In this document: positions 5,245 through 57,596 of the stretch, one piece after another | Numbering within the stretch: the stretch's first letter is position 1 | Layout of the letters: the number at the start of each line of letters is the position of its first letter | Program-made: the position numbers and the translations under genes | Notes under the pieces: generated by a model | Told to the model about the DNA's origin: nothing | The model's database searches: none | Seen by the model: the letters and a program-made list of their open reading frames with translations, nothing else | NCBI GenBank assembly: GCA_038496445.1 | Contig: JALMLS010000015.1 | Location: 186,001 to 250,000 of the forward strand | Reading direction: 5' to 3' | DNA from: Trichosphaerium sp. ATCC 40318 | Taxonomy: Eukaryota; Protista; Tubulinea | DNA: 64,000 nt

Positions 5245-6417
5245 ATGAACGCTGACGCAAGCACCAAACGTCTTACATCTACTTCATCAACTATTACGCC
5301 TTCGTATGATAACATTCCTCGTGAACTGTGGAATGTAATATTATCGCTTTTACACACCGACAAAGATCGATGTGCAGCCGCAGCAACATGTTCGGCACTC
5401 TTAAAGCTGATACATAATAATATCGGCTACGACAAGATATACGCGACCGAAGACAACGTAAGAATGATCTCCGAAAGCAAGGCAATACAACAAAACACCC
5501 TCGTCCTCGTTTCGTCCCGTTTTCTGAAAAGCAACCCTGACGAATCCGTTTGTTTCCTAGCTGGAGTGCATACAATCGATTTGTCAGAGTGCAGAAACGT
5601 CACTGACGTGAGTTTAAAAGCTCTTGCCGGAGTTTACGAAATAAACCTCATCGACAATCAATCAATCACAGATGAAGGTATAAAAGCGCTCGCTGGTGTT
5701 CATACTATCAATATTGAGAATACCAAAGTAACAGATGAAGGCGTCAAGGCACTAGCAGGCGTTCATTCTATAAACATAGGTATCACTGCAATAACAGATG
5801 AGAGTTTAAAAGCTCTTGCTGGAGTGCATACAATCGATTTAACAAATTGTGTCAATATCACAAATGAAGGCTTGAAACATCTTGCAGGAGTTCATACTAT
5901 TTCGTTGAGAGCAGGCAGAAATATAACAGATGCTGGCTTGAAGCACTTGGCCGGTGTTCATGCTATTGATATAAGCTATATGGAAACAGCAAAACTTGGG
6001 AGAAGGGGAATTACAGGTGAAGGTCTTGCGGAATTACAAGGCGTTCATACACTAAATATTGCTGGAAATGAAGGTTTGATACCTTCAGACTTGAATGATC
6101 TTACAGGTGTGTATGCAATCAATCTAGAGGCTAATCTCTACATGCCATCTATGGCTATCAGTATGAACGCTCTGAAGAGTGTAAAGGTAATGAGTCATGG
6201 TACACCAGGATACGGAGATGGAGACAATGAGGATTTCTTGTTACCTCTTGAGGGGATTGTCGTAAATACTGTTGAGATTTCTAGAAATTGGATGAAAGTT
6301 GTCAATGGGAAATGGGTTGATACCGGATCTATGGCACATCCTGATCTTAAAGAAGTCAATTGGGATATTTTAAAAACATTCGAAAATTCTACTGAAGATG
6401 GCATATTTTTTCTTTAA
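5245..6417 (+). CDS. F-box-like + leucine-rich repeat protein, intronless
   Basis: N-terminal DNIPRELWNVILSLL...RCAAAATCS is F-box-like. It is followed by about 9 LRRs of consensus LAGVHTI(D/N)Lxxx(x)ITDEGLKA. Confidence 0.85.
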   Translation: MNADASTKRLTSTSSTITPSYDNIPRELWNVILSLLHTDKDRCAAAATCSALLKLIHNNIGYDKIYATEDNVRMISESKAIQQNTLVLVSSRFLKSNPDESVCFLAGVHTIDLSECRNVTDVSLKALAGVYEINLIDNQSITDEGIKALAGVHTINIENTKVTDEGVKALAGVHSINIGITAITDESLKALAGVHTIDLTNCVNITNEGLKHLAGVHTISLRAGRNITDAGLKHLAGVHAIDISYMETAKLGRRGITGEGLAELQGVHTLNIAGNEGLIPSDLNDLTGVYAINLEANLYMPSMAISMNALKSVKVMSHGTPGYGDGDNEDFLLPLEGIVVNTVEISRNWMKVVNGKWVDTGSMAHPDLKEVNWDILKTFENSTEDGIFFL

Positions 6418-24479: not shown

Positions 24480-25184
24480 ATGGACGTCTTACATTCGTAT
24501 TTATCCCGCATATTAAGCCTTCCTGTGGAGATACATCTCCTTATTATTGACTTAGATCATGAAGTGTATATAAAGTGGCCATTACTTTCAAAACATACAG
24601 CAATGACAACAAGATTTGACAATCAGTTAAAAAAACACGGGAAATGGAAAAAAATATTAAAATCGCTTGTTATCATTCAAAGATACTGGAAACACGGTCT
24701 ATCTCATGGAACATATAAGTCTTGGTACGATAATGGACAAATAAGGAAGCAATGCCATTTTCTTGATGGTAAACTAAGCGGTGAATACCTAATATGGCAT
24801 GACAATGGCACTCTAGCAGAGCATAAACATTATGTTGATAATACACTTGAAGGTGAGTATAAGACATGGAGCTCTGATGGTCAATTGTGGGAGCACTATA
24901 ATTTTGTTAATAACAAACTACACGGAGAATACAAGTCTTGGCAACTTTATGGTATTCTATGTAAGCATTGTAGTTATGTCAATGATGAACTAGACGGAGA
25001 GTACAAGAGTTGGTATGCCAATGGTCAAATGGAGGAGAAATGTTACTATGTTGCTGGTAAACGTGAAGGAGAGTCTCGTAAATGGTATAGAGATGGTCAA
25101 CTAAAAAGCCACCATCAATATGTTAGTGGAATCCGTGTTGTTCAGAAGCTTGAAACCAGGGACAGCACGTGCATTCTACTGTAA
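24480..25184 (+). CDS. F-box-like + MORN variant (MORN_2/YwqK-like) repeat protein, intronless
   Basis: LSLPVEIHLLII N-terminus followed by 24-aa repeats G(E/T)YKSWYxNGQLxxxxxYVxxKL. Confidence 0.85.
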   Translation: MDVLHSYLSRILSLPVEIHLLIIDLDHEVYIKWPLLSKHTAMTTRFDNQLKKHGKWKKILKSLVIIQRYWKHGLSHGTYKSWYDNGQIRKQCHFLDGKLSGEYLIWHDNGTLAEHKHYVDNTLEGEYKTWSSDGQLWEHYNFVNNKLHGEYKSWQLYGILCKHCSYVNDELDGEYKSWYANGQMEEKCYYVAGKREGESRKWYRDGQLKSHHQYVSGIRVVQKLETRDSTCILL

Positions 25185-28893: not shown

Positions 28894-30171
28894 ATGGACG
28901 ACTCTAAAAGGCGTAAGGACACCTGTTTACATGATAACGTATTAATTTTCTTCTAAAAGACTTTAAACCGGCCCCACAAACTCTCTCGATATCAGACCTT
29001 CCATCAGATGTACAAATACTCATTTCAAGCTACACCAAAGAGATTTTCTCCAAATGGCACGTGAGCAATAAAGCGAAAAAATCCGAGAAAGAAAATGGAT
29101 GTTCTCGTTTTTTTAACTCGTATTAGGCATATACTCTCACGTAAGATGGCTACAATGACACATTACGATAATGAGTGTAAACGTAGAGGCACATGGCTTT
29201 CGTGGCACGATAATGGGAGAATATTCAGGTCTGTACATATGCGTAATGATGAAGCTTATGGAGAACACAAAGAGTGGAGTGATAATGGACAACTCGTTCT
29301 AAAAACATTCATGACACCTAACGGCGCCACAGGAGATTACTTTCAATGGTATGAGAATGGGCAAATGGAAATGAAGTGTTTCCTTAATAACGGTAAGGAG
29401 GAAGGTGTATACGATGAGTGGTATGATAATGGACAAAGACGTGTAAAGTGTTTTTTCATTAACGGAAAACAAGAAGGAGAAAGACTTGTTTGGCATGATA
29501 ACGGCCAACTTTTTGTAAAATGTCAACGCAAGAATGACTTGTTCGAGGGTGAGTATCGTTCATGGCATCCTAATGGACAATTACGCGTTGAAAAGCGTCT
29601 TGAGAAAGGTAAAGAAGTCGGTGAATACAAGCGTTTTTATGATAATGGACAAATCGAAATTCAATGCTTCAAGGAGAAGGATAAACAGAATGGTCCTTAT
29701 ATTCAATGGTATAAGAATGGCCAAATGGAACTTAAGTGTATGTTGAAAGATGGTCTTGAGGTTGGAGAGTATTACGAATGGTTTGATAACGGCCAGACGA
29801 AAATTCGCTGTTTTTTCATAAAAGGAAAACAACAAGGTCAAAGAAGAGTTTTTTATGATAACGGACAGCTCCGTGTTGAAGGCATAATGAAGGATGGTAA
29901 ATGGGACGGACTACTAAAAGGTTGGTGTTACTCAGGACAGCTCACATCCGAAAAACATATGCTTGATGGTGTCATAAATGGAGAGTGTAAAGAGTGGTAT
30001 AATAATGGACAGATAAAGACTCACTGTTTTAAAGTTAATGGATTGAAGCAAGGAGAGTATAAATTATGGTCAGCAAATGGTATTCTATTGGATTGGAGTA
30101 TGTTTAAGGATGACCAAAGGATTGAGCGTTTATCTAATTTAGTACAAGCAGAAGTACCAATTACGTTGTAG
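28894..30171 (+). CDS. F-box-like + MORN_2 repeat protein (two short 5' introns)
   Basis: Upstream exon SISDLPSDVQILISSYTKEIFSKW joins HILSRKMATMTHYD through a GC-AG intron (29057-29126) and aligns with the 24480 N-terminus. About 12 MORN_2 repeats follow. Confidence 0.85.
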
Positions 30172-30381
30172 TACCAGTTGTGGATAAAAAACGAGTTTTT
30201 TTTAAATCTTTATTCGTAAAACCTACTTTCTTGTCGCTTATTTGTCCTATGTATAGTTCTTGTGAGGTGATGTAGTACAGCCACTTCAATTGCACAATAC
30301 ATTTTTGGTTTGACCGCACGTGAATTTGACTGATTGTGATAAAAAGTCTTTCTCCGACTATTTTTGTGACAAAGAAGCAAA

Positions 30382-33300
30382 ATGGCAACAGCAGACTTCA
30401 CAGCGCTCATAAAAGATAATCTAGAACCTTACTATGCTCTGTCTAAGAAATTTGGCGGCCCCGTTGCTGAACAGGTACGATCAGTTGGATCTAATTTAGT
30501 AACGTTACATTCTATCAAAAACTAGTTATTTCGCCACAAACCGCGCCTGTGGTTTATACAGCAATTGTTTTAGCACATTTTGGTTATTTCGCTCTACGCT
30601 CACTAAAAACGCTAGGCGGACCTCGTAAAAAAAGCTGTTGATCTTGAATTGGCACTTGTTAAAAAAGCGACAGGCACAAAGAAACCAGGCCAAGCAGCCT
30701 TTATGAAGGAGCTCGAACCTATCAGCAACCTCATGAAGCAAATTAGCGGTATGAAGGACAAGAACAGAGGTCATAAGCACTTTAACCACTTGAGTGGTGT
30801 TGGTGAAGGTAAGCGAGCGAACAGAACGCGGTTTTGACACAAAGTAAACAATATTGTCCGTTTCTTATCGGTTTTTTTTTAGGTATTCAAGGACTCGCTT
30901 GGGTTTGCGTCGAACCTACACCTGGTCCATTCGTAAAAGAAAGTATTGGATCTGCTGAATTCTGGACAAACAAAATCCGCAAAGAGTTCAAGGGAAAGTA
31001 CGTGCTGCCCCACTCATTTGCTCCTGTTTCCTAGCGGGTTTTTTTTTTTGTACTAACGTTTGCGATTTTAGAGATGCTGACCAAATTAAATGGGTAGAAG
31101 GATACACTGGCTTCCTAAAGGCTGTACGTGTCACAATAATTTTTTTTGTAGAGTTACTCTAAAAATAAGCTAAATGTCAATTTTCCCTTGTAGTTGATCC
31201 CTTACATCAAACAATACCATACAACCGGTTTATCTTGGAACACTGGTGGCGCTAAACAAGCCCCTGCTGCTAGTGGTGGCGCTCCTGTATCATCAAGCGG
31301 ATGTACGTTGTTTTGTCCGTTTCTGTAGTCAAAAAGCGTCAATATTTCTCTACGCGCGTTCCAATTATGTCTTCGTGTTTGTGACGTTGTTGCTGTACCT
31401 ACACGATTTTTTTCAAGCGTTTTTAAGCAAAAAAATCTAACACATTTCATAGCTGCCAGCGCCTTCGCTGCACTCATCAAAGAGCACATTGAACCGTATG
31501 TCGCCATCTCAAACAAATATGGAGGACCAGTAAAAGAACAAGCAGCTGCATTGAAGAAAGCTCTTGATCTCGAACTCGACTTGTTGAAAAAAGCTGAAGG
31601 CATGAAAAAACCAGCTCCAGCTGATTTCCAAAAAATGTTACAACCAATCAGTGCATTGATGATCTCTATTGGAGGCTTCAAAGATAAGAACAGAGGTCAC
31701 AAGCACTTCAACCATTTGAGTGGTGTCGGCGAAGGTAACCTTTTCAACAGGTTGGTGTTATTAATGACTTTGTAGGTGTTCAAGCGCTCGCTTGGGTTTG
31801 TATCGAACCTACACCAGGTCCTCATGTTAAGGAAACAACTGGATCTGCTGAATTCTGGACAAACAAAATTCGTAAAGAGTTCAAGGGAAAGTACGTCCTT
31901 GTCTATCATCAAACTACTTGTTTTATTGTTTATGGTACTAATCTCTTTGTGTAGAGACGCGGAACAAATCAAATGGGTTGAGGGCTTCACTGGATTCTTG
32001 AAGGCTGTACGTTGTTACTTTTGCACGAATGCGACCAATTGTACTTATTTAATGATTTATTAGTTGGTTGGATACATTAAACAATACCACACAACCGGGT
32101 TATCTTGGAACACTGGTGGTGCCAAGAGCACAGGAAGTGCTGGTGCCGTTCCTGCACCTACTGGAGGAAGTACGTATTTTTAAGAGTTTTTTTTGATTGT
32201 GAATTGTTATTCTTATTGTATTAGGTTCCGCTGGCTTCGCTGCACTCATCAAAGAGCACATTGAACCATACGTCACCATCTCAAACAAATATGGTGGACC
32301 AGTAAAAGAACAAGCAGCTGCATTGAAGAAGGCTCTTGATCTCGAACTCGACTTGTTGAAAAAAGCTGAAGGCATGAAAAAGCCAGCACCAGCTGATTTC
32401 CAAAAAATGTTACAACCAATCAGTGCATTGATGATCTCTATTGGAGGCTTCAAAGACAAGAACAGAGGACATAAATACTTCAACCATTTGAGTGGAGTCG
32501 GTGAAGGTAACTTTTACTCAAAGTATGCTATTTACCTTCTAATCTGCTTGTAGGTGTTCAAGCGCTCGCTTGGGTTTGTATTGAACCTACACCAGGTCCT
32601 CACGTCAAAGAAACAATTGGATCTGCTGAGTTCTGGACAAACAAAATCCGCAAAGAGTTCAAGGGAAAGTACGTAGTACTTACTTACACTTATAAATGCT
32701 GACGTGTATATGTAGAGACGAAGAACAAATTAAATGGGTTGAGGGTTTCACTGGATTCTTGAAAGCTGTGCGTTTGAAACATCCTCCAAGCGTTGAAACA
32801 CGAACTAATATGGTTTAGCTCGTTGTTTTCATCAAACAACACCACACAACTGGTTTATCTTGGGGCACTGGTGCTGCACGTCCAAGTGCTACTGGCGGAG
32901 CCGCTCCAGCAGGTATGTCATTATTACTACAAGCAAAAATGTAACTAGTTTGTTTTCTTAGTTGCTGGTGGCTTTGATGGTATTATCAAAGAGTTCCTCG
33001 AACCATACGTTGCATTATCTACAAAGATTGGTGGACCAGTTGCTGAACAAGTTCGTATTTTTGCTTTTCACAAATTATTTTTGGAGCGTCATTCTCACGT
33101 GATTGGTTTAGGCTAAAGCTTTTGAAAAAGCTGTAAAACTTGAAGGTGATCTCATCAAAAAGGCAAAGGGAATGAAGAAACCTGCTCCAGCTAAATTACA
33201 AGAACTCCTTGGACCTATCAGGTACGCCTTTTTTTGCTTTCTCGCCTTAAGTTTTCTTGTTGCTTTGTGTACTTATTAATGTGTGATTATTTAGCAAAGA

Positions 33301-33707
33301 GATGATGACTGTTTCAGCTTTCAAAGATAAGCATAGAGCTCACAAGGATAAAAACTTCATTGCTGGTGTTGCTGAAGGTGTTGCTGTATTAGGATGGGTT
33401 GCTGTTGAACCTGCTCCTGGACCTTATGTTAAGGGCACTATTCCTAGCTCTGAGTTCTGGACGAACAAGATCCTCACTGAGTTCAAGGGAAAGTACGTAT
33501 CACTTGATCTTTTATTTATGTTTCCTAACGCGATTGAATAGAGGTGAAATGCAAACCAATTGGGTTAAGGCATTCAACGGATTTTTAAAGGCGGTACGTA
33601 TTCTTGATGTCTTTGTTGTTATTTGTTGTTCCCGTTTACTCATTTTCTATTAGTTGTTGCCATTCATCAAGGCTGAGCATACCACTGGATTGACATGGGG
33701 AAAATAA
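30382..33707 (+). CDS. Protein of four tandem N-terminal CAP/Srv2 helical folded domains; no WH2 or C-CAP domain
   Basis: Four copies of LEPYxAxSxKxGGPVxEQ...(FNHLSGVGEG)...LAWVCVEPTPGP...SAEFWTNKIRKEFKG...HTTGLSW, joined by short G/A/P linkers. Stop directly after repeat 4 (GLTWGK*). Confidence 0.9.
31463..32770 (+). repeat. Near-identical exonic duplication (N-CAP repeats 2 and 3)
   Basis: 31463-31734 and 32234-32506 are almost identical at nucleotide level, and downstream exons also match. The introns do not. Confidence 0.9.
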
Positions 33708-34499
33708 GTTTGATTTATTGATCTTATCCTTTGTCCTTATTAAACAGAAATTTCAGAGCAATAAAATCTGTTTACTGTCAAAATTTTGTTTGTAATTTTT
33801 GTTAGGGTTCCGATTTTTTGGAATTATTACGCCTGTAAATAGAGAGACAATATTCTAATTGCTGTAGTAACGATAAACTAGTCCGTTGCAGCACATACAC
33901 GCGCTTTATTACATCGTTTCTTTGACATTCTTCAAAATGTTGTACAGTCGAAGTATTCCATTTTATTGTACATAGAGGTACAACAAAGTGCTTTTGTATC
34001 GAATCCTCCAGTTCAGTGTGTCAACAAAAGGTGAAAAAAAGTAGCTATTGTTAGCTGACACGTCAAGTTTACCATACTTTCGTAAATGCATTAAAGCTTA
34101 CGTAAACAGTACTTGTGGCGTTTGCCGCTACCTACATACAGATAATTTAGCCAAGCTTGTCCCTCTAAGTACGTCAAACAGCACATTTATAGCATGTGTA
34201 GCTTATTAGTATAGCACTTCTCGATCCAAAGACAAAGAACAGAGAAGATATTAATGTAGTATAAGTTGATTCGTTACATTACTCTAAGAAGGTAAACGAC
34301 ATAGGAAATGCCAAAAAAAAAAGAGAAATAAAATTCAGAGAAACAAAAACCAAAACAGGCAAGTAAATAATTAAAATAAAACAGTATAGTATTAATATCT
34401 ACATTTAATTTATGTGCGTATAGAACGCCTTTACATTATTTACAGAGTTTAGCCATTATGTACAAAAAAACCAAGAGTGGTTTCGTCGGGTTGGCATCT

Positions 34500-35312
34500 T
34501 TAGTGGCATGAGCATTCTCCACTTTCATGTAGATCCAAGTCGGCAATGATCGCGTAGCCGTTACCATTTTTTTTAACGTTGTTGATCCCAATTGTTCGTA
34601 GTTTATGTTCGTGGACGTCCCAGTGTGTTACTTCTTGAACGAAGAAAGACATTGGTACATCGAACTCTGTTGTTCCGTTTCGAATGCGTAAATCCGTCGT
34701 GCTTGAGGTGATAATCTTCCCGTGAGCAACTGTGCTGTCGTTTACTTGTAAATTGACGTTTTCTGATAAGTCGATTTGAATTGTCGAGACTGTCGATTCG
34801 TTCTCTTGGATGACCGTGAGGTTATGACATCTCGTTATTTCTAAGCTAGAAATAACACCGTTGAATCGTACTACGCAGTTATCGCAAGCTACGATTGAAA
34901 GATGGGCGACACGTCTTGGAATCGTAACATTTGTATTTTTGCAAAATGAAATGTCAACGCCTTGTCCCATAGTAGCTTTGTTCACAGTGATGTTACCACC
35001 GTTGAACCGAGATACCTTCCAAGCGCGTCCACGAACACCAAATACGGATGTTTTGCCAAAGGCAAGAGGATTTGCTTGAGGTTTTGGTTTTTGGCCTTGT
35101 ACGAAGTTTATGGTTGCTCCATCTTTGATATTATAATCCCCGACGCGTTTACTATCTGATAGCTCGTCTCCGGCGAAAAATAAGCGTTGAAGCGAAAGTG
35201 GAATTCCTACTTCGGCTTGAAATTTTTTCTTCAAAGAATGTATGGTGTCTTTGTCTTCAATGTCGAATGTATATGTACTGTAATGTTTGATTGTTCTTAT
35301 ATGTACTCTCAT
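34500..35312 (-). CDS. Ubiquitin-like domain fused to C-CAP (CARP beta-helix) domain, intronless
   Basis: Residues 1-73 are ubiquitin-like (TIHSLKKKFQAEVGIPLSLQRLFFAGDELSDSKRVGDYNIKDGATI), with no C-terminal GG. They are followed by VDISFCKNTNVTI...LSIVACDNCVVRFNGVISSLEITRC...TIQIDLSENVNL...IITSSTTD...EFDVP, typical of C-CAP. Confidence 0.8.
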   Translation of the reverse strand: MRVHIRTIKHYSTYTFDIEDKDTIHSLKKKFQAEVGIPLSLQRLFFAGDELSDSKRVGDYNIKDGATINFVQGQKPKPQANPLAFGKTSVFGVRGRAWKVSRFNGGNITVNKATMGQGVDISFCKNTNVTIPRRVAHLSIVACDNCVVRFNGVISSLEITRCHNLTVIQENESTVSTIQIDLSENVNLQVNDSTVAHGKIITSSTTDLRIRNGTTEFDVPMSFFVQEVTHWDVHEHKLRTIGINNVKKNGNGYAIIADLDLHESGECSCH

Positions 35313-54580: not shown

Positions 54581-55842
54581 TTAAAAACATTTTCTATGAA
54601 CAAGACTTGGACCATATTCATCATATTCTTCGTCAGACATAGCAGATTGTAAGTACAAATTGCTAAGACTTCCTAAAATAGATCCACCAACCCAAGCAGC
54701 AATACTTCTTTTAGGAGGTTGTATAGCCTTAACAGTAATAGTACTCGGAGCTATATTCATTAAATCATATTGTAAACGATCACCAAAACCAGGAATCATA
54801 GAGGAACCACCAGTAACAAGAACATTACGATAAAAAGTAGTACACAGTGACATGTCACATTTCCTAATTCCTTCCTGTATTATCTCAACTATTTTTCTTT
54901 TTTCTTCAACTCCTTCAATAAGACTAGGATTTAATAACACCTCAGGACAAGTATATTGTTCCTTAGATAAAACAAAGGAGTGTCCATTCATATCATATTT
55001 CAATTCTTTATCCAATTTCTTACTATAAAATGGAAGTCCTGGATCCATACAACAAACAGACTCTTTCATTGTATTATAGCTTTCAAAGGAAGGAGTGAAA
55101 GGCTTATCTGAGGATACTCTTTGTGGCTCTGGAGCTATTTTCATCAGATACTCTGTTACATCCTTACCTCCAACTTTTATGCAATATGATGCATGTTTTA
55201 GTACTTTATCTGCAAATATATATGTTATGTATGTAACATCGTAATTTGATTGAACTACACAACCCTCTGATCGTCCAGTTGCAAATAATGCAAGTACAGG
55301 ACGCGGCATGAGTAGTAAGTGGGGTGTTTTGTATTTTTCGAACATAATCTCTGTTGTCTTTTCTCTACAAGTTCATTTCATTAGCGGTTGATTGTTAAAA
55401 GGTTTGTTGCTACCTATTTTCGTTTGGGTTCATTGGCGCTTCTGTGAGAATAACTCCTGTCTCTTCAGGGGATGCACAAGCACCTTCATACATAGCATAA
55501 CGCCATATCTCATCGATAGCATCGAAATCGGTTATGTGGCCATGTTTTACTGGGTATTTCAACTCCAATATGTCTCGTAGCTTTTGGGCTTCGTTTCCAA
55601 CGTATGACCGCGGTTTTGCGTTCGTTTTACCTTGATCGGATTTCGCTTTACCCCAAACCGTTGGAAAAGTAGTAAATGGGTCATCAGAACCCGCAATACC
55701 CACTCTGCACGTCCTGGAGCCAGTATCAATTACAATGGGATCTAATTATGGGTCAACTCGACCATAAACCATCGCTCAGCGAATGGCGCTTGGTGCTAAA
55801 CAACTAAAACTAGTTTCTTCACGTACAATCGTCTTCAGACAT
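54581..55842 (-). CDS. Divergent actin / actin-related protein (2 introns)
   Basis: PIVIDTGSRTCRVGIAG, LKYPVKHG, VILTEAPMNP, GGKDVTEYL, NVLVTGGSSMIPG, AWVGGSILGSL, EYDEYGPSLVHRKCF. Confidence 0.9.
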
Positions 55843-56284: not shown

Positions 56285-57596
56285 ATGGCGTCACAAGTAC
56301 CTATAATGACTTGGCAACAGCTAGAAAGCATGACAGACTACAGTATTGATTACGTGAACGGTCCTACAAACCCGCAGTCCAAGCTTCGTCTCTTTGGCAA
56401 ATCTGAGTCTGATGTTCGCGTCACACTATTCAGAGATCATCACGCTTGGTGTCCTTACTGCCAAAAGATTTGGTTGTGGCTAGAAGAGAAGAAAATCCCA
56501 TACAAAGTTGAAAAGGTCACAATGTTCTGCTACGGCGCAAAGGAGCCATGGTATAAGCGTAAAGTACCTTCTGGTATGCTTCCAGCAATAGAACTAGACG
56601 GTAGAATCATTACAGAGAGCGATGATATCATAGTCGCTTTAGAAAAAGTATACGGTCCTTTACAGAAGGGAATGCGTGATTCAAGAGTTGTTCCACTTCG
56701 ACAGCTCGAAAGACTCCTCTTCAGGGCTTGGTGCGCATGGCTATGTCGTCCTCTTCGATCAAAACGCGAAGAAGACGCTATGCGTGCTAAGTTTCAGCAA
56801 ATAATGTCAAAAGTTGAAGAAGCACTTGGACGCACAGAAGGTCCTTATTTTCTTGAAAAATTCGGAACAACTGATGTCATTTTTACTCCTTATGTTGAGA
56901 GGATGAATGCCAGTTTATATTACTACAAAGGATATAATATGCGTAAAGAGAATCCTAAGTTTGGTGAATGGATGGATGCTATGGAAACACGTGATACTTA
57001 TCGTGGTACTCAGAGTGATCTACATACACATGTTCATGATTTACCTCCTCAAATGGGTGGTTGTTGGGAGAGTGGTGCGCCAGAGATGCTTGAGTGTAAA
57101 GATAGAGTAAATAACGGACCTTGGGAAGGACTTCCTGATGTTGGTTTTCCTGAACCTAAAATGTCAAAGGAAGAAGCTCTTTATCGTGTTTGTAAGCATA
57201 GAGATAATGTTATCAAGACAAACCCTGCCGATAATACATTATTTGATACAGCGCTCAGATGCGCATTAACAAATATGATGACAGGGAAAGGTACAAACAA
57301 AGAAAATTTTGAGAAAAAAAAACCTTGATGTATTTTGAAGCAGTTTTGGTTGCTCAGTGTTTTGTTGTGGTTGTTTGTTAATGTTGTTTTTAGTTTGTAC
57401 ACCTCCAAGCGGATCAGATGTAGCATTGAGATACATGAGAGATCATATAAGTGTACCAAGAGATATGTCAGTATGGGCAGCACGTGTCTTACGAAAATCT
57501 CTTGAAAGTACAGCTGCTTTGGCTGGGGACGGGCAAAGTAAGCCGCTAACGAAGAATCATCGTCGTGACCAAGATCCTACACGTTTTGCTAATTAA
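56285..57596 (+). CDS. Glutathione S-transferase family protein (CPYC type), one intron at 57291-57392
   Basis: [59 protein letters not shown]. Confidence 0.9.

What the first reader, a model, noticed from the sequence alone, without database searches (positions are those of the whole stretch)
30382..33707. Four HFDs in one chain may replace CAP oligomerisation
CAP HFD activity on cofilin-decorated filaments depends on oligomerisation through an N-terminal coiled coil (established). This protein starts directly at the HFD and strings four HFDs on short Gly/Ala/Pro linkers (seen). A covalent tetramer could supply the same avidity, giving a stand-alone depolymerase or severing factor (inference). 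Repeat 4 is the most divergent (NFIAGVAEG replaces NHLSGVGEG).
Basis: partly seen in the sequence, partly recalled or inferred. Interest (0 to 1): 0.75.

Follow-up and report, generated by a model that had tools for sequence, protein, structure and literature searches.

The report
Four-domain CAP actin-disassembly protein, amoeba-type
This is a real, expressed gene whose protein is just four copies of the actin-filament-end-binding domain of CAP on flexible linkers; it belongs to an undescribed family in amoebae that probably replaces CAP's usual self-assembly with a single covalent chain.

Summary
One + strand gene (ATG 30382, stop ends 33707; 18 exons, 17 short introns) encodes 720 aa. It consists of four gap-free 166-aa CAP helical folded domains (HFDs) joined by 20, 19 and 15 residue Gly/Ala/Pro/Ser linkers. 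It has no N-terminal oligomerisation motif, no WH2 and no CARP domain.

A transcriptome scaffold from a public sample matches the spliced model across all 17 introns and all three linkers. All four copies are under purifying selection (dN/dS 0.10-0.18).

The architecture is not unique. HFD-only arrays of three or four copies occur in tubulinean amoebae (Nolandella, Rhizamoeba, Arcella) and in soil metatranscriptomes. Separate tandem-HFD expansions occur in red algae, a diplonemid, Pygsuia, Rigifila and a cryptophyte.

The oligomerisation motif is present in 28 of 33 canonical CAPs but in none of the complete arrays with three or more HFDs. The idea has not been tested biochemically.

The downstream CARP domain belongs to a separate, convergent, expressed gene that fuses a ubiquitin-like domain to CARP. 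I could not establish whether this organism also has a canonical CAP. The window is not human.

The parts
30382..33707 (+). Whole coding region of the 4xHFD gene. It has 18 exons: 30382-30474, 30616-30808, 30883-30997, 31072-31123, 31194-31302, 31453-31734, 31776-31890, 31955-32006, 32064-32169, 32225-32506, 32554-32668, 32716-32767, 32819-32912, 32962-33050, 33112-33221, 33295-33492, 33542-33593, 33654-33707. The product is 720 aa.
   Evidence: Splice model. Transcript scaffold L002 matches the spliced sequence from 30376 to 33779. There is an in-frame TGA at 30367-30369.
30385..31241 (+). HFD 1 (aa 2-167), interrupted by 4 introns
   Evidence: Pfam CAP_N on exon pieces. It keeps 25 of 28 residues conserved in canonical HFDs.
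31242..31301 (+). Linker 1, 20 aa rich in Gly/Ala/Pro/Ser, followed by phase-1 intron 31303-31452
   Evidence: Transcript L002 positions 1-611 cross this junction in spliced form.
31302..32111 (+). HFD 2 (aa 188-353)
   Evidence: Pfam CAP_N E 2e-21 on its first exon. PDB 1s0p and 6rsw match. It keeps 25 of 28 conserved residues.
32112..32168 (+). Linker 2, 19 aa, followed by phase-1 intron 32170-32224
   Evidence: The linker is crossed by the exactly matching part of L002.
32169..32866 (+). HFD 3 (aa 373-538). It is 93% identical to HFD 2, with dS 0.34.
   Evidence: The AlphaFold2 model gives a six-helix bundle with pLDDT above 90. Foldseek TM 0.88-0.92 to CAP HFD structures.
32867..32911 (+). 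Linker 3, 15 aa, followed by phase-1 intron 32913-32961
   Evidence: pLDDT is below 50 in the model.
32912..33701 (+). HFD 4 (aa 554-719), the most divergent copy. NFIA replaces NHLS. The protein ends one residue after the domain.
   Evidence: It keeps 21 of 28 conserved residues. It aligns in full without gaps to 1s0p and to human CAP1 46-209.
34500..35312 (-). Neighbouring convergent single-exon gene of 270 aa: a ubiquitin-like domain fused to a CAP-type CARP domain. It is not part of the 4xHFD gene but may be functionally linked to it.
   Evidence: Pfam ubiquitin 1.7e-18 and CAP_C 2.1e-18. Its own 989-nt transcript, L001, is colinear with 35372-34387. The CARP fold is closest to CAP CARP structures.

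Best explanation
Shown: the gene encodes an intact, expressed, selectively maintained chain of four CAP helical folded domains joined by disordered 15-20 residue linkers. It has none of the other CAP modules: no oligomerisation domain, no polyproline, no WH2, no CARP. It belongs to a family of HFD-only arrays with three or four copies. Family members start at the HFD and end one to four residues after the last one. The family is found in tubulinean amoebae and in soil metatranscriptomes.

Inferred: the protein acts as a covalently multivalent version of N-CAP. Two neighbouring HFDs would occupy the pointed-end faces (actin subdomains 2 and 4) of the last two subunits of a cofilin-decorated filament. 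The clash between them would push off the terminal subunit, as in the published two-HFD structures. The remaining HFDs would keep the protein at the shrinking end, supplying avidity and processivity. In this reading, valency comes from the polypeptide chain rather than from the N-terminal coiled coil.

Also inferred: recharging of the released ADP-actin, which canonical CAP does with WH2 plus CARP, must be done in trans by another protein.
For: Gene and transcript:
- Gene model.
- Spliced transcript across all introns and linkers.

Domain identity and integrity:
- Four full-length HFDs by Pfam, PDB sequence search and predicted fold.
- Linkers are predicted disordered and pTM is only 0.55, so there is no fixed arrangement between domains.
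- dN/dS is 0.10-0.18 for every pair of copies. dS is saturated except for copies 2 and 3, so the copies are old and each is constrained.
- 21-25 of the 28 residues conserved in canonical HFDs are kept. In copies 1-3 these include the FNHLS..E stretch, which lies within the actin-binding helices (human CAP1 P107-Y172) (PMC13048244).

Family:
- Complete 4x members: Nolandella P0002, P0178 and L011. Complete 3x members: P0179, P0181 and L007. All start at the HFD and end straight after it.
- Position-by-position orthology of d1-d4 between Nolandella, L011, L014 and P0005 shows that the four-domain layout has been conserved over substantial divergence.

OD and valency:
- The OD motif is in 28/33 canonical CAPs and in 0 complete arrays with three or more HFDs.
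- Tandem expansion recurs independently in red algae, a diplonemid, Pygsuia and others.
- Literature: monomeric HFD needs more than 20-fold higher concentration, GST dimerisation partly rescues this, activity rises with valency up to a tetramer, and a tetramer model assigns two arms to the two terminal subunits.
Against: - No biochemical evidence exists for any tandem-HFD protein that I could find.
- All four copies have Leu or Gly at a position where canonical HFDs have a highly conserved Arg (repeat position 42), and Trp where they have a conserved Tyr (position 122). I could not map either change onto the published interface residues.
- Copy 4 has lost three conserved residues of the NHLS stretch inside the actin-binding helices, so it may not bind actin the way the others do.
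- I did not check whether a 15-20 residue linker can span two HFDs bound at a pointed end. No coordinates were available to me, so I have only a length estimate.
- The OD correlation rests on only about three independent lineages of arrays with three or more HFDs.
- Whether this organism has cofilin or a canonical CAP was not determined.
Confidence: 0.6

Rival explanations
1. It is one half of a split CAP. The HFD array would work only together with a separately encoded C-terminal half, which takes over and recharges the actin monomers the array removes. The candidate here is the adjacent ubiquitin-like/CARP protein, or another C-CAP elsewhere in the genome. On this view it is not an autonomous depolymerase.
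For: - A CAP-type CARP gene lies about 800 bp downstream in convergent orientation and is expressed.
- In an unrelated lineage (locus L006), a 4xHFD ORF is followed 1.27 kb downstream, on the same strand, by a polyproline-WH2-CARP ORF.
- A diplonemid has 4xHFD and CARP in one chain.
- N-CAP and C-CAP are known to work as separable halves (PMC7543520).
Against: - The neighbour has no WH2 motif and lacks several nearly invariant CARP residues (the GKVN and PEQF motifs).
- The word search found no relative of the neighbour, so it is not a conserved partner across the family.
- Published N-CAP alone gives full depolymerisation activity.
- This rival is compatible with the best explanation rather than opposed to it.
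Confidence: 0.15
2. It handles monomers rather than filament ends. Each HFD would bind the pointed face of a cofilin/ADP-actin monomer, so the chain would collect up to four such complexes. It would act as a buffer or delivery scaffold, or as a pointed-end cap, without speeding depolymerisation.
For: HFD binds ADP-G-actin together with an ADF-H domain in the crystal structure, and N-CAP blocks filament reannealing (PMC6876575). The conserved actin-binding stretch is kept in copies 1-3.
Against: In the published work, multivalent HFD constructs accelerate depolymerisation rather than merely capping. Nothing in the sequence distinguishes the two behaviours.
Confidence: 0.13
3. The HFDs have been re-used for a partner other than actin, so the array has a non-actin role.
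For: All copies differ from canonical HFDs at two highly conserved positions (Arg to Leu/Gly, Tyr to Trp), and copy 4 differs at three more.
Against: 21-25 of 28 conserved residues are retained. The predicted fold matches actin-bound HFD structures at TM about 0.9 and rmsd 1.1-1.7 A. Strong purifying selection acts on the same positions as in CAP.
Confidence: 0.08
4. It is an artefact or a decaying gene: an assembly expansion of a repeat, a mis-joined gene model, or a neutral duplication with no function.
For: The transcript scaffold has a 100-N gap and a short chimeric stretch where copies 2 and 3 are nearly identical.
Against: - The copies differ at saturated synonymous distance, except for copies 2 and 3, so they cannot be collapsed or expanded reads.
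- The reading frame is open through 18 exons.
- Every intron is removed in the transcript, and the gap falls inside one genomic exon.
- dN/dS is 0.10-0.18.
- Complete orthologous architectures exist in several other organisms.
Confidence: 0.02

Closest known systems
Canonical cyclase-associated protein (CAP/Srv2; e.g. Dictyostelium CAP, mouse and human CAP1)
   Same: Each of the four units is a full-length HFD. Sequence matches: PF21938, E 5e-35 to 1s0p, 38-43% identity. Predicted fold: TM 0.88-0.92 to HFDs, including those bound to actin pointed ends. Most residues conserved across canonical HFDs are kept.
   Different: It has four HFDs instead of one. It has no N-terminal oligomerisation motif, no polyproline, no WH2 and no CARP, so the whole nucleotide-exchange half is missing from this chain.
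HFD-only tandem arrays of tubulinean amoebae (Nolandella sp. AFSM9 EP01128_P010313, 722 aa; Rhizamoeba saxonica EP01130_P006868; Arcella intermedia UniRef entry named 'CAP N-terminal domain-containing protein'; unnamed soil metatranscriptome ORFs L007, L011, L014, P0178-P0192)
   Same: The layout is the same. The Met is followed at once by an HFD. There are three or four HFDs on 14-21 residue Gly/Ala/Pro/Ser linkers. The protein ends 1-4 residues after the HTTGLxW motif. Identity is 41-55%. In the second tree, which holds only the amoeba-type arrays and six canonical CAP HFDs, the array domains share one clade with moderate support. One long-branch canonical CAP (P0119) also falls inside it, and the other five canonical HFDs fall outside.
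   Different: In the window's protein the four copies are each other's nearest relatives rather than matching positions d1-d4 of the Nolandella group. The AU test rejects grouping its d4 with theirs, p = 0.02. So its copies were either duplicated or homogenised within its own lineage.
Red-algal tandem-HFD proteins (Porphyridium purpureum KAA8499829.1, 960 aa, 5 HFDs, annotated 'Adenylyl cyclase-associated protein 1'; Compsopogon, Rhodosorus, Pyropia relatives)
   Same: They are HFD-only chains without an OD motif. The linkers are 20-30 residues.
   Different: They form a separate clade in the domain tree, so the expansion was independent. Linkers are longer and charged. Some unnamed relatives in this clade (not tied to a species) carry an extra degenerate HFD-like N-terminal region of about 185-250 aa.
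Full-length CAPs with several HFDs (Namystynia karyoxenos EP01062_P014336: 4 HFDs + CARP; unnamed P0023, P0082, P0110, P0117: 2-3 HFDs + CARP)
   Same: HFDs in tandem in one chain. Namystynia also starts at the HFD without an OD.
   Different: They keep the C-terminal half. P0023 keeps the OD motif as well.
Engineered multivalent N-CAP constructs (GST-dimerised HFD; OD replaced by dimer, trimer or tetramer modules)
   Same: Valency of the HFD is supplied by something other than the native coiled coil. The published constructs show that this is enough to raise activity (PMC6876575, PMC7543520, PMC13048244).
   Different: Those constructs are hub-and-spoke oligomers. This protein is a natural linear chain, so neighbouring HFDs are tied head to tail.

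Membership tests
CAP helical folded domain (Pfam PF21938) | Sequence match above the curated cut-off over the whole 159-position profile | tested here: met
   Exon pieces score 47.9-77.7 bits against a cut-off of 27. P0001, which equals residues 221-720, scores 496.6 bits with three stretches, one covering profile positions 1-159. My own HMM finds four domains covering positions 1-166.
CAP helical folded domain (Pfam PF21938) | Six-helix bundle fold superposable on solved HFDs | tested here: met
   The AlphaFold2 model of copies 3 and 4 has mean pLDDT 90.4 and six helices per copy. The ten best Foldseek PDB hits are all CAP HFDs, with target TM 0.88-0.92. The model depends on an alignment of family members.
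CAP helical folded domain (Pfam PF21938) | Conservation of the actin-binding helices (human CAP1 P107-Y172) | tested here: inconclusive
   Copies 1-3 keep FNHLS..E, GWV/AWV, PGP and F.TN. Copy 4 has NFIA in place of NHLS. All copies have Trp in place of a conserved Tyr. The individual contact residues from the published structures were not available to me.
Canonical CAP/Srv2 | N-terminal oligomerisation motif (CAP_N-CM, 'RLE' heptads) before the HFD | tested here: not met
   Only one residue precedes HFD 1. An in-frame stop lies four codons upstream, and the previous gene ends 210 nt upstream. The motif is present in 28/33 canonical CAPs in the comparison set.
Canonical CAP/Srv2 | Polyproline, WH2 and CARP domain C-terminal to the HFD in the same chain | tested here: not met
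   The protein ends one residue after HFD 4. The stop codon is confirmed by the transcript, which continues 72 nt into the 3' UTR. The nearby CARP domain is on the other strand, in its own transcript.
Canonical CAP/Srv2 | Acceleration of cofilin-dependent pointed-end depolymerisation and nucleotide exchange on G-actin | not testable with these tools
   This needs biochemistry.
HFD-only tandem arrays (undescribed family, tubulinean amoebae) | Starts at an HFD, has three or more HFDs on short low-complexity linkers, and ends just after the last HFD with no other domain | tested here: met
   Window: N-terminal overhang 1 aa, linkers 20/19/15, C-terminal overhang 1 aa. The same holds in Nolandella, P0178, P0179, P0181, L007 and L011.
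HFD-only tandem arrays (undescribed family, tubulinean amoebae) | Domains group with those of other family members rather than with canonical CAP HFDs | tested here: met
   A 14-row clade with SH-aLRT 97 in the first tree. A 25-row clade with support 93/91 in the second. One long-branch canonical CAP (P0119) falls inside both, so monophyly is not clean.

The most novel reading that the evidence does not exclude
Stringing HFDs in one chain may be a recurrent evolutionary substitute for coiled-coil oligomerisation of CAP. It arose at least five times, and the coiled coil was lost whenever three or more HFDs are present. In this amoeba lineage CAP would have been taken apart into a stand-alone covalent tetravalent pointed-end depolymeriser and a separately encoded CARP protein next door, fused to a ubiquitin-like domain. 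That would be a natural separation-of-function experiment on the CAP machine.
Probability: 0.3. Interest if true: 0.7.

Novelty: new variant of a known kind. Interest (0 to 1): 0.55.

Why it matters
How many HFD arms CAP needs, and what its oligomeric state is (tetramer or hexamer), is still under discussion. The most recent structural work proposes a tetramer with two arms on the filament end and two in reserve.

This family offers natural proteins in which valency is fixed by the chain at three, four or five, with no coiled coil and no C-terminal half. That makes the avidity and processivity model directly testable with monomeric, stoichiometrically defined proteins.

The repeated independent origin of such arrays, and the loss of the oligomerisation motif in arrays with three or more HFDs, argue that HFD multivalency is the property under selection.

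The finding also flags that automatic names such as 'Adenylyl cyclase-associated protein 1' are being given to proteins that lack half of CAP.

Tried and rejected
- The word search with the ubiquitin-like/CARP neighbour found only itself. I therefore could not show that it is a conserved partner of the arrays.
- The first PDB search with that whole protein was swamped by ubiquitin. I repeated it on the CARP part alone.
A 6-sequence alignment worked. It returned no contig of the window's own transcriptome sample, so it could not tell whether the organism has a canonical CAP.
- I looked up the samples of the three canonical CAPs most similar to the window's HFDs (P0173, P0193, P0194). All come from other samples.
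- I tried to decide whether the 4xHFD and polyPro-WH2-CARP ORFs of locus L006 are one spliced gene. The obvious donor/acceptor pair is out of phase, and I left the question open.
- Positional orthology of the window's copy 4 with copy 4 of the Nolandella group was tested and rejected (p-AU 0.02). I named that group only after seeing the tree.
- Seven literature searches found no description of tandem CAP HFDs. The phrase search was dominated by 'high-fat diet'.
- No tRNA genes are present in the window.
- The full 720-aa protein could not be handed to the search tools as one sequence. It is spliced and I did not type it. I used exon references and P0001 (residues 221-720) instead, so repeat 1 was analysed only in local scripts.
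Full report
**What is in the sequence**

The window is eukaryotic: GC is about 38%, and the introns are very short with GTACGT...TAG ends. I do not take it for human. Its transcripts are in a JGI transcriptome-type sample, and its nearest protein relatives are from amoebae.

ORF listing across 30382-33707 gave only fragments. I joined them by 17 GT..AG introns of 41-150 nt. The result is one open reading frame of 2163 nt, 720 aa, from ATG 30382 to a stop ending at 33707.

The protein is four 166-residue units that align to each other without any gap. They are separated by linkers of 20, 19 and 15 residues made of Gly, Ala, Pro, Ser and Thr. One residue precedes the first unit and one follows the last.

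**Are the units CAP HFDs?**

Yes, on three kinds of evidence.
- Exon pieces given by reference hit Pfam PF21938 (the CAP N-terminal helical folded domain) at 48-78 bits against a cut-off of 27.
- PDB sequence searches hit only CAP HFDs: Dictyostelium 1s0p/1tjf, mouse 6rsw/6rsq and human 9q7o. Copy 4 aligns end to end with 1s0p at E 5e-35.
- An AlphaFold2 model of copies 3 and 4, built on an alignment of 26 two-domain segments, gives two six-helix bundles at pLDDT above 90. The linkers fall below 50 and pTM is 0.55. That is what independent beads on a flexible string would give.
- The ten best Foldseek matches in the PDB are all CAP HFDs, with target TM 0.88-0.92. They include the HFD bound to G-actin and to filament pointed ends.

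**Is it one gene, and does it start at the HFD?**

The exhaustive protein search returned P0001. This is a 500-aa protein 100% identical to residues 221-720 of my model. It sits on a 2375-nt scaffold of JGI sample 3300016894 (L002).
- Scaffold positions 1-611 equal the spliced model from 30376 through exons 1-5, across linker 1 and into exon 6.
- After a 100-N gap, positions 712-2374 equal the spliced model from the start of copy 2 to 33779, 72 nt beyond the stop. There are seven mismatches.
- All seven lie in the first 154 nt, and each is the copy-3 variant. This is a short-read chimera where copies 2 and 3 are nearly identical. From there on the match is exact.
- The gap falls inside a single genomic exon. 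So all 17 introns and all three linkers are confirmed as spliced into one mRNA.

At the 5' end, an in-frame TGA lies four codons before the ATG. A MORN-repeat gene on the same strand ends only 210 nt upstream. That leaves no room for an exon encoding an oligomerisation domain.

**Are all four copies maintained?**

- Synonymous divergence between copies is saturated (dS 1.6-2.3), except between copies 2 and 3 (dS 0.34).
- dN/dS is 0.10-0.18 for every pair. The copies are therefore old, distinct and individually constrained. This also excludes an assembly artefact.
- Intron positions are shared between copies: repeat positions 133 and 151 in all four, 95 in copies 1-3, and 31 in copies 1 and 4. 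The three inter-repeat introns are all phase 1. The array therefore grew by genomic duplication of intron-bearing units, and whole units could in principle be skipped in frame.
- Of 28 positions that are at least 80% conserved in 28 canonical single-HFD CAPs, the four copies keep 25, 25, 23 and 21.
- Copy 4 replaces NHLS by NFIA. By the gap-free alignment this corresponds to human CAP1 N129-S132. That lies inside the three helices (P107-Y172) reported to contact actin (PMC13048244).
- All copies have Leu or Gly for a conserved Arg, and Trp for a conserved Tyr.

**Relatives**

I ran the exhaustive search because the claim rests on the absence or presence of relatives with this architecture. The query was the 93-aa first exon of copy 2. 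It found 170 proteins at E up to 1e-3. About 28 of the 150 listed representatives have two to five HFDs.

| Relative | HFD copies and other domains |
|---|---|
| Nolandella sp. (722 aa, complete ORF) | 4 HFDs |
| Rhizamoeba saxonica | 3 |
| Porphyridium purpureum KAA8499829.1 | 5 |
| Compsopogon | 4 |
| Rhodosorus and a Pyropia relative | 2 or more |
| Pygsuia | 2 |
| Rigifila | 2 |
| A Rhodomonas relative | 2 |
| Namystynia karyoxenos (diplonemid) | 4 HFDs plus CARP |

Several unnamed proteins combine two or three HFDs with CARP.

The word search with P0001 added about 18 further HFD-only clusters at 49-55% identity. One is from Arcella intermedia. Counting domains showed complete 4x (P0178) and 3x (P0179, P0181) members.

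A metagenome scan added three soil-metatranscriptome ORFs. L011 is a complete 4x with an upstream stop, and it ends with the same last residues as the window's protein. L014 is 4x. L007 is a complete 3x.

Nolandella, Rhizamoeba and Arcella are all Tubulinea.

**Domain trees**

In an 83-domain tree the window's four domains form one clade (SH-aLRT 95). That clade sits inside a clade with the Nolandella, Rhizamoeba and P0005 domains (97).

The red-algal domains form a separate clade (99). The copies within Pygsuia, Namystynia (d1-3), P0082, P0128 and P0117 (d2-3) group by protein. Tandem expansion has therefore happened independently in at least five lineages.

A more careful 30-domain tree shows position-by-position orthology of d1, d2, d3 and d4 among Nolandella, L011, L014 and P0005. 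In that group the four-domain layout is ancestral and conserved. The window, L007 and Rhizamoeba domains instead group by protein. Forcing the window's d4 to join the other d4s is rejected (p-AU 0.02). The window's copies were thus either duplicated or homogenised in their own lineage, long ago given the saturated dS.

**The oligomerisation domain**

| Protein class | OD 'RLE' motif upstream of the HFD |
|---|---|
| Canonical single-HFD proteins with a complete N-terminus | 28 of 33 |
| Two-HFD proteins | present in four (Pygsuia, Rigifila, P0023, P0065) |
| Complete arrays with three or more HFDs that start at the HFD (window, Nolandella, Rhizamoeba, Porphyridium, Compsopogon, Namystynia) | 0 of 6 |
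| Long red-algal-type proteins | absent; their N-terminal extension looks like a degenerate HFD |

The complete arrays found later (L007, L011, P0178, P0179, P0181) also start at the HFD. This is the pattern expected if a chain of three or more HFDs makes the coiled coil dispensable. It rests on only about three independent lineages.

**Mechanism**

Published work gives the following.
- Monomeric HFD needs more than 20-fold higher concentration than oligomeric N-CAP, and GST dimerisation partly restores activity (PMC6876575).
- Replacing the OD by dimer, trimer or tetramer modules raises activity stepwise (PMC7543520 and PMC13048244).
- Cryo-EM shows that the second HFD, bound to the second subunit, displaces the first subunit by up to 7.6 A when cofilin is present. 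The proposed tetramer has two arms on the end, one recycling and one in reserve.
- N-CAP alone accounts for full depolymerisation activity.

My best explanation is therefore that this protein is a covalent, linear equivalent of the N-CAP tetramer. The domain identity, integrity, expression, flexible linkers and lack of OD are shown. Binding to cofilin-decorated pointed ends, the use of adjacent copies on the two terminal subunits, and processivity are inferred.

The linker reach is roughly 50-70 A if extended. I only estimated this and did not check it against coordinates.

**The neighbour**

About 800 bp downstream, on the opposite strand, a single-exon ORF (34500-35312) encodes 270 aa. It has a ubiquitin-like domain (E 1.7e-18) directly followed by a CAP-type CARP domain (CAP_C E 2.1e-18; TBCC falls below its cut-off).
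- Its own 989-nt transcript is colinear with 35372-34387. It is a separate convergent gene, not a downstream exon.
- Its CARP part matches CARP domains of many CAPs. By sequence it is closest to Cryptosporidium CAP 2b0r. By predicted fold it is closest to CAP CARP structures, well ahead of RP2 and TBCC. That model was built on an alignment of CAP CARPs, which favours this result.
- It has no WH2 and lacks the GKVN and PEQF motifs.
- The word search found no relative.

Finding the two halves of CAP side by side is unlikely to be chance. I could not show a functional link.

In locus L006, which groups with the red-algal domains, a 4xHFD ORF is followed 1.27 kb downstream on the same strand by a polyproline-WH2-CARP ORF. 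Whether these are one gene or two is unresolved. In Porphyridium the 5xHFD gene is followed by a single-HFD gene on the opposite strand.

**What stays open**

- I could not determine whether the window's organism also has a canonical CAP. Its transcriptome sample is not in the scanned contig collection, and the most similar canonical CAPs come from other samples.
- Seven searches of the held literature found no paper describing tandem CAP HFDs. That library is incomplete.

**Verdict**

The protein is not unique. It is a member of an unstudied family whose sequences are already public, some under automatic CAP names. I rate it a new variant of a known kind, of moderate to good interest to people working on actin disassembly.

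Noticed in passing
window 34500-35312 (- strand): A single-exon gene encodes a ubiquitin-like domain fused directly to a divergent CAP-type CARP domain, with no WH2. It is convergent with the 4xHFD gene, about 800 bp downstream of its stop, and is expressed as its own 989-nt transcript. The word search found no relatives, so the domain combination appears unusual.
   Followed up: partly
L006:9989-15083 (Logan SRR23272274 contig): A 4xHFD ORF with a degenerate HFD-like N-terminal extension is followed 1.27 kb downstream, on the same strand, by a 236-aa ORF. That ORF starts with polyproline, then a WH2-like LKK motif, then CARP. It is either a split CAP or one gene with a long intron; I did not resolve which.
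   Followed up: partly
L005:10001-13626 (Porphyridium purpureum VRMN01000001.1): The 5xHFD gene is followed immediately by a 176-aa single-HFD gene on the opposite strand.
   Followed up: no
window 30475-33653: Most of the 17 introns begin GTACGT and all end TAG. They are 41-150 nt long. The three introns between repeats are all phase 1, so skipping a whole HFD unit would keep the reading frame.
   Followed up: partly
window 24480-25184 (+) and 29095-30171 (+): Two MORN_2-repeat protein ORFs. The second ends only 210 nt before the start codon of the 4xHFD gene.
   Followed up: no
window 54581-55345 (- strand): An ORF with an actin-family match (Pfam Actin E 8.6e-51, profile positions 117-410). 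It is probably the 3' exon of an actin or actin-related gene, about 21 kb from the CAP-derived genes.
   Followed up: no
window 56285-57328 (+) and 5245-6417 (+): A glutathione S-transferase-like ORF (GST_N_2, GST_C_5) and a leucine-rich-repeat (LRR_6) ORF.
   Followed up: no
L002:612-865: The public transcript scaffold for this gene has a 100-N gap followed by a chimeric stretch carrying seven copy-3 variants within copy 2. The gene caller split it into a 209-aa and a 500-aa product, so the public protein (P0001) is truncated and shows only three HFDs.
   Followed up: yes
P0004, P0008, P0020, P0061, P0137 (N-terminal 185-250 aa): Unnamed multi-HFD proteins whose domains group with the red-algal clade carry an N-terminal extension that looks like a further, degenerate HFD. 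Pfam does not detect it.
   Followed up: no
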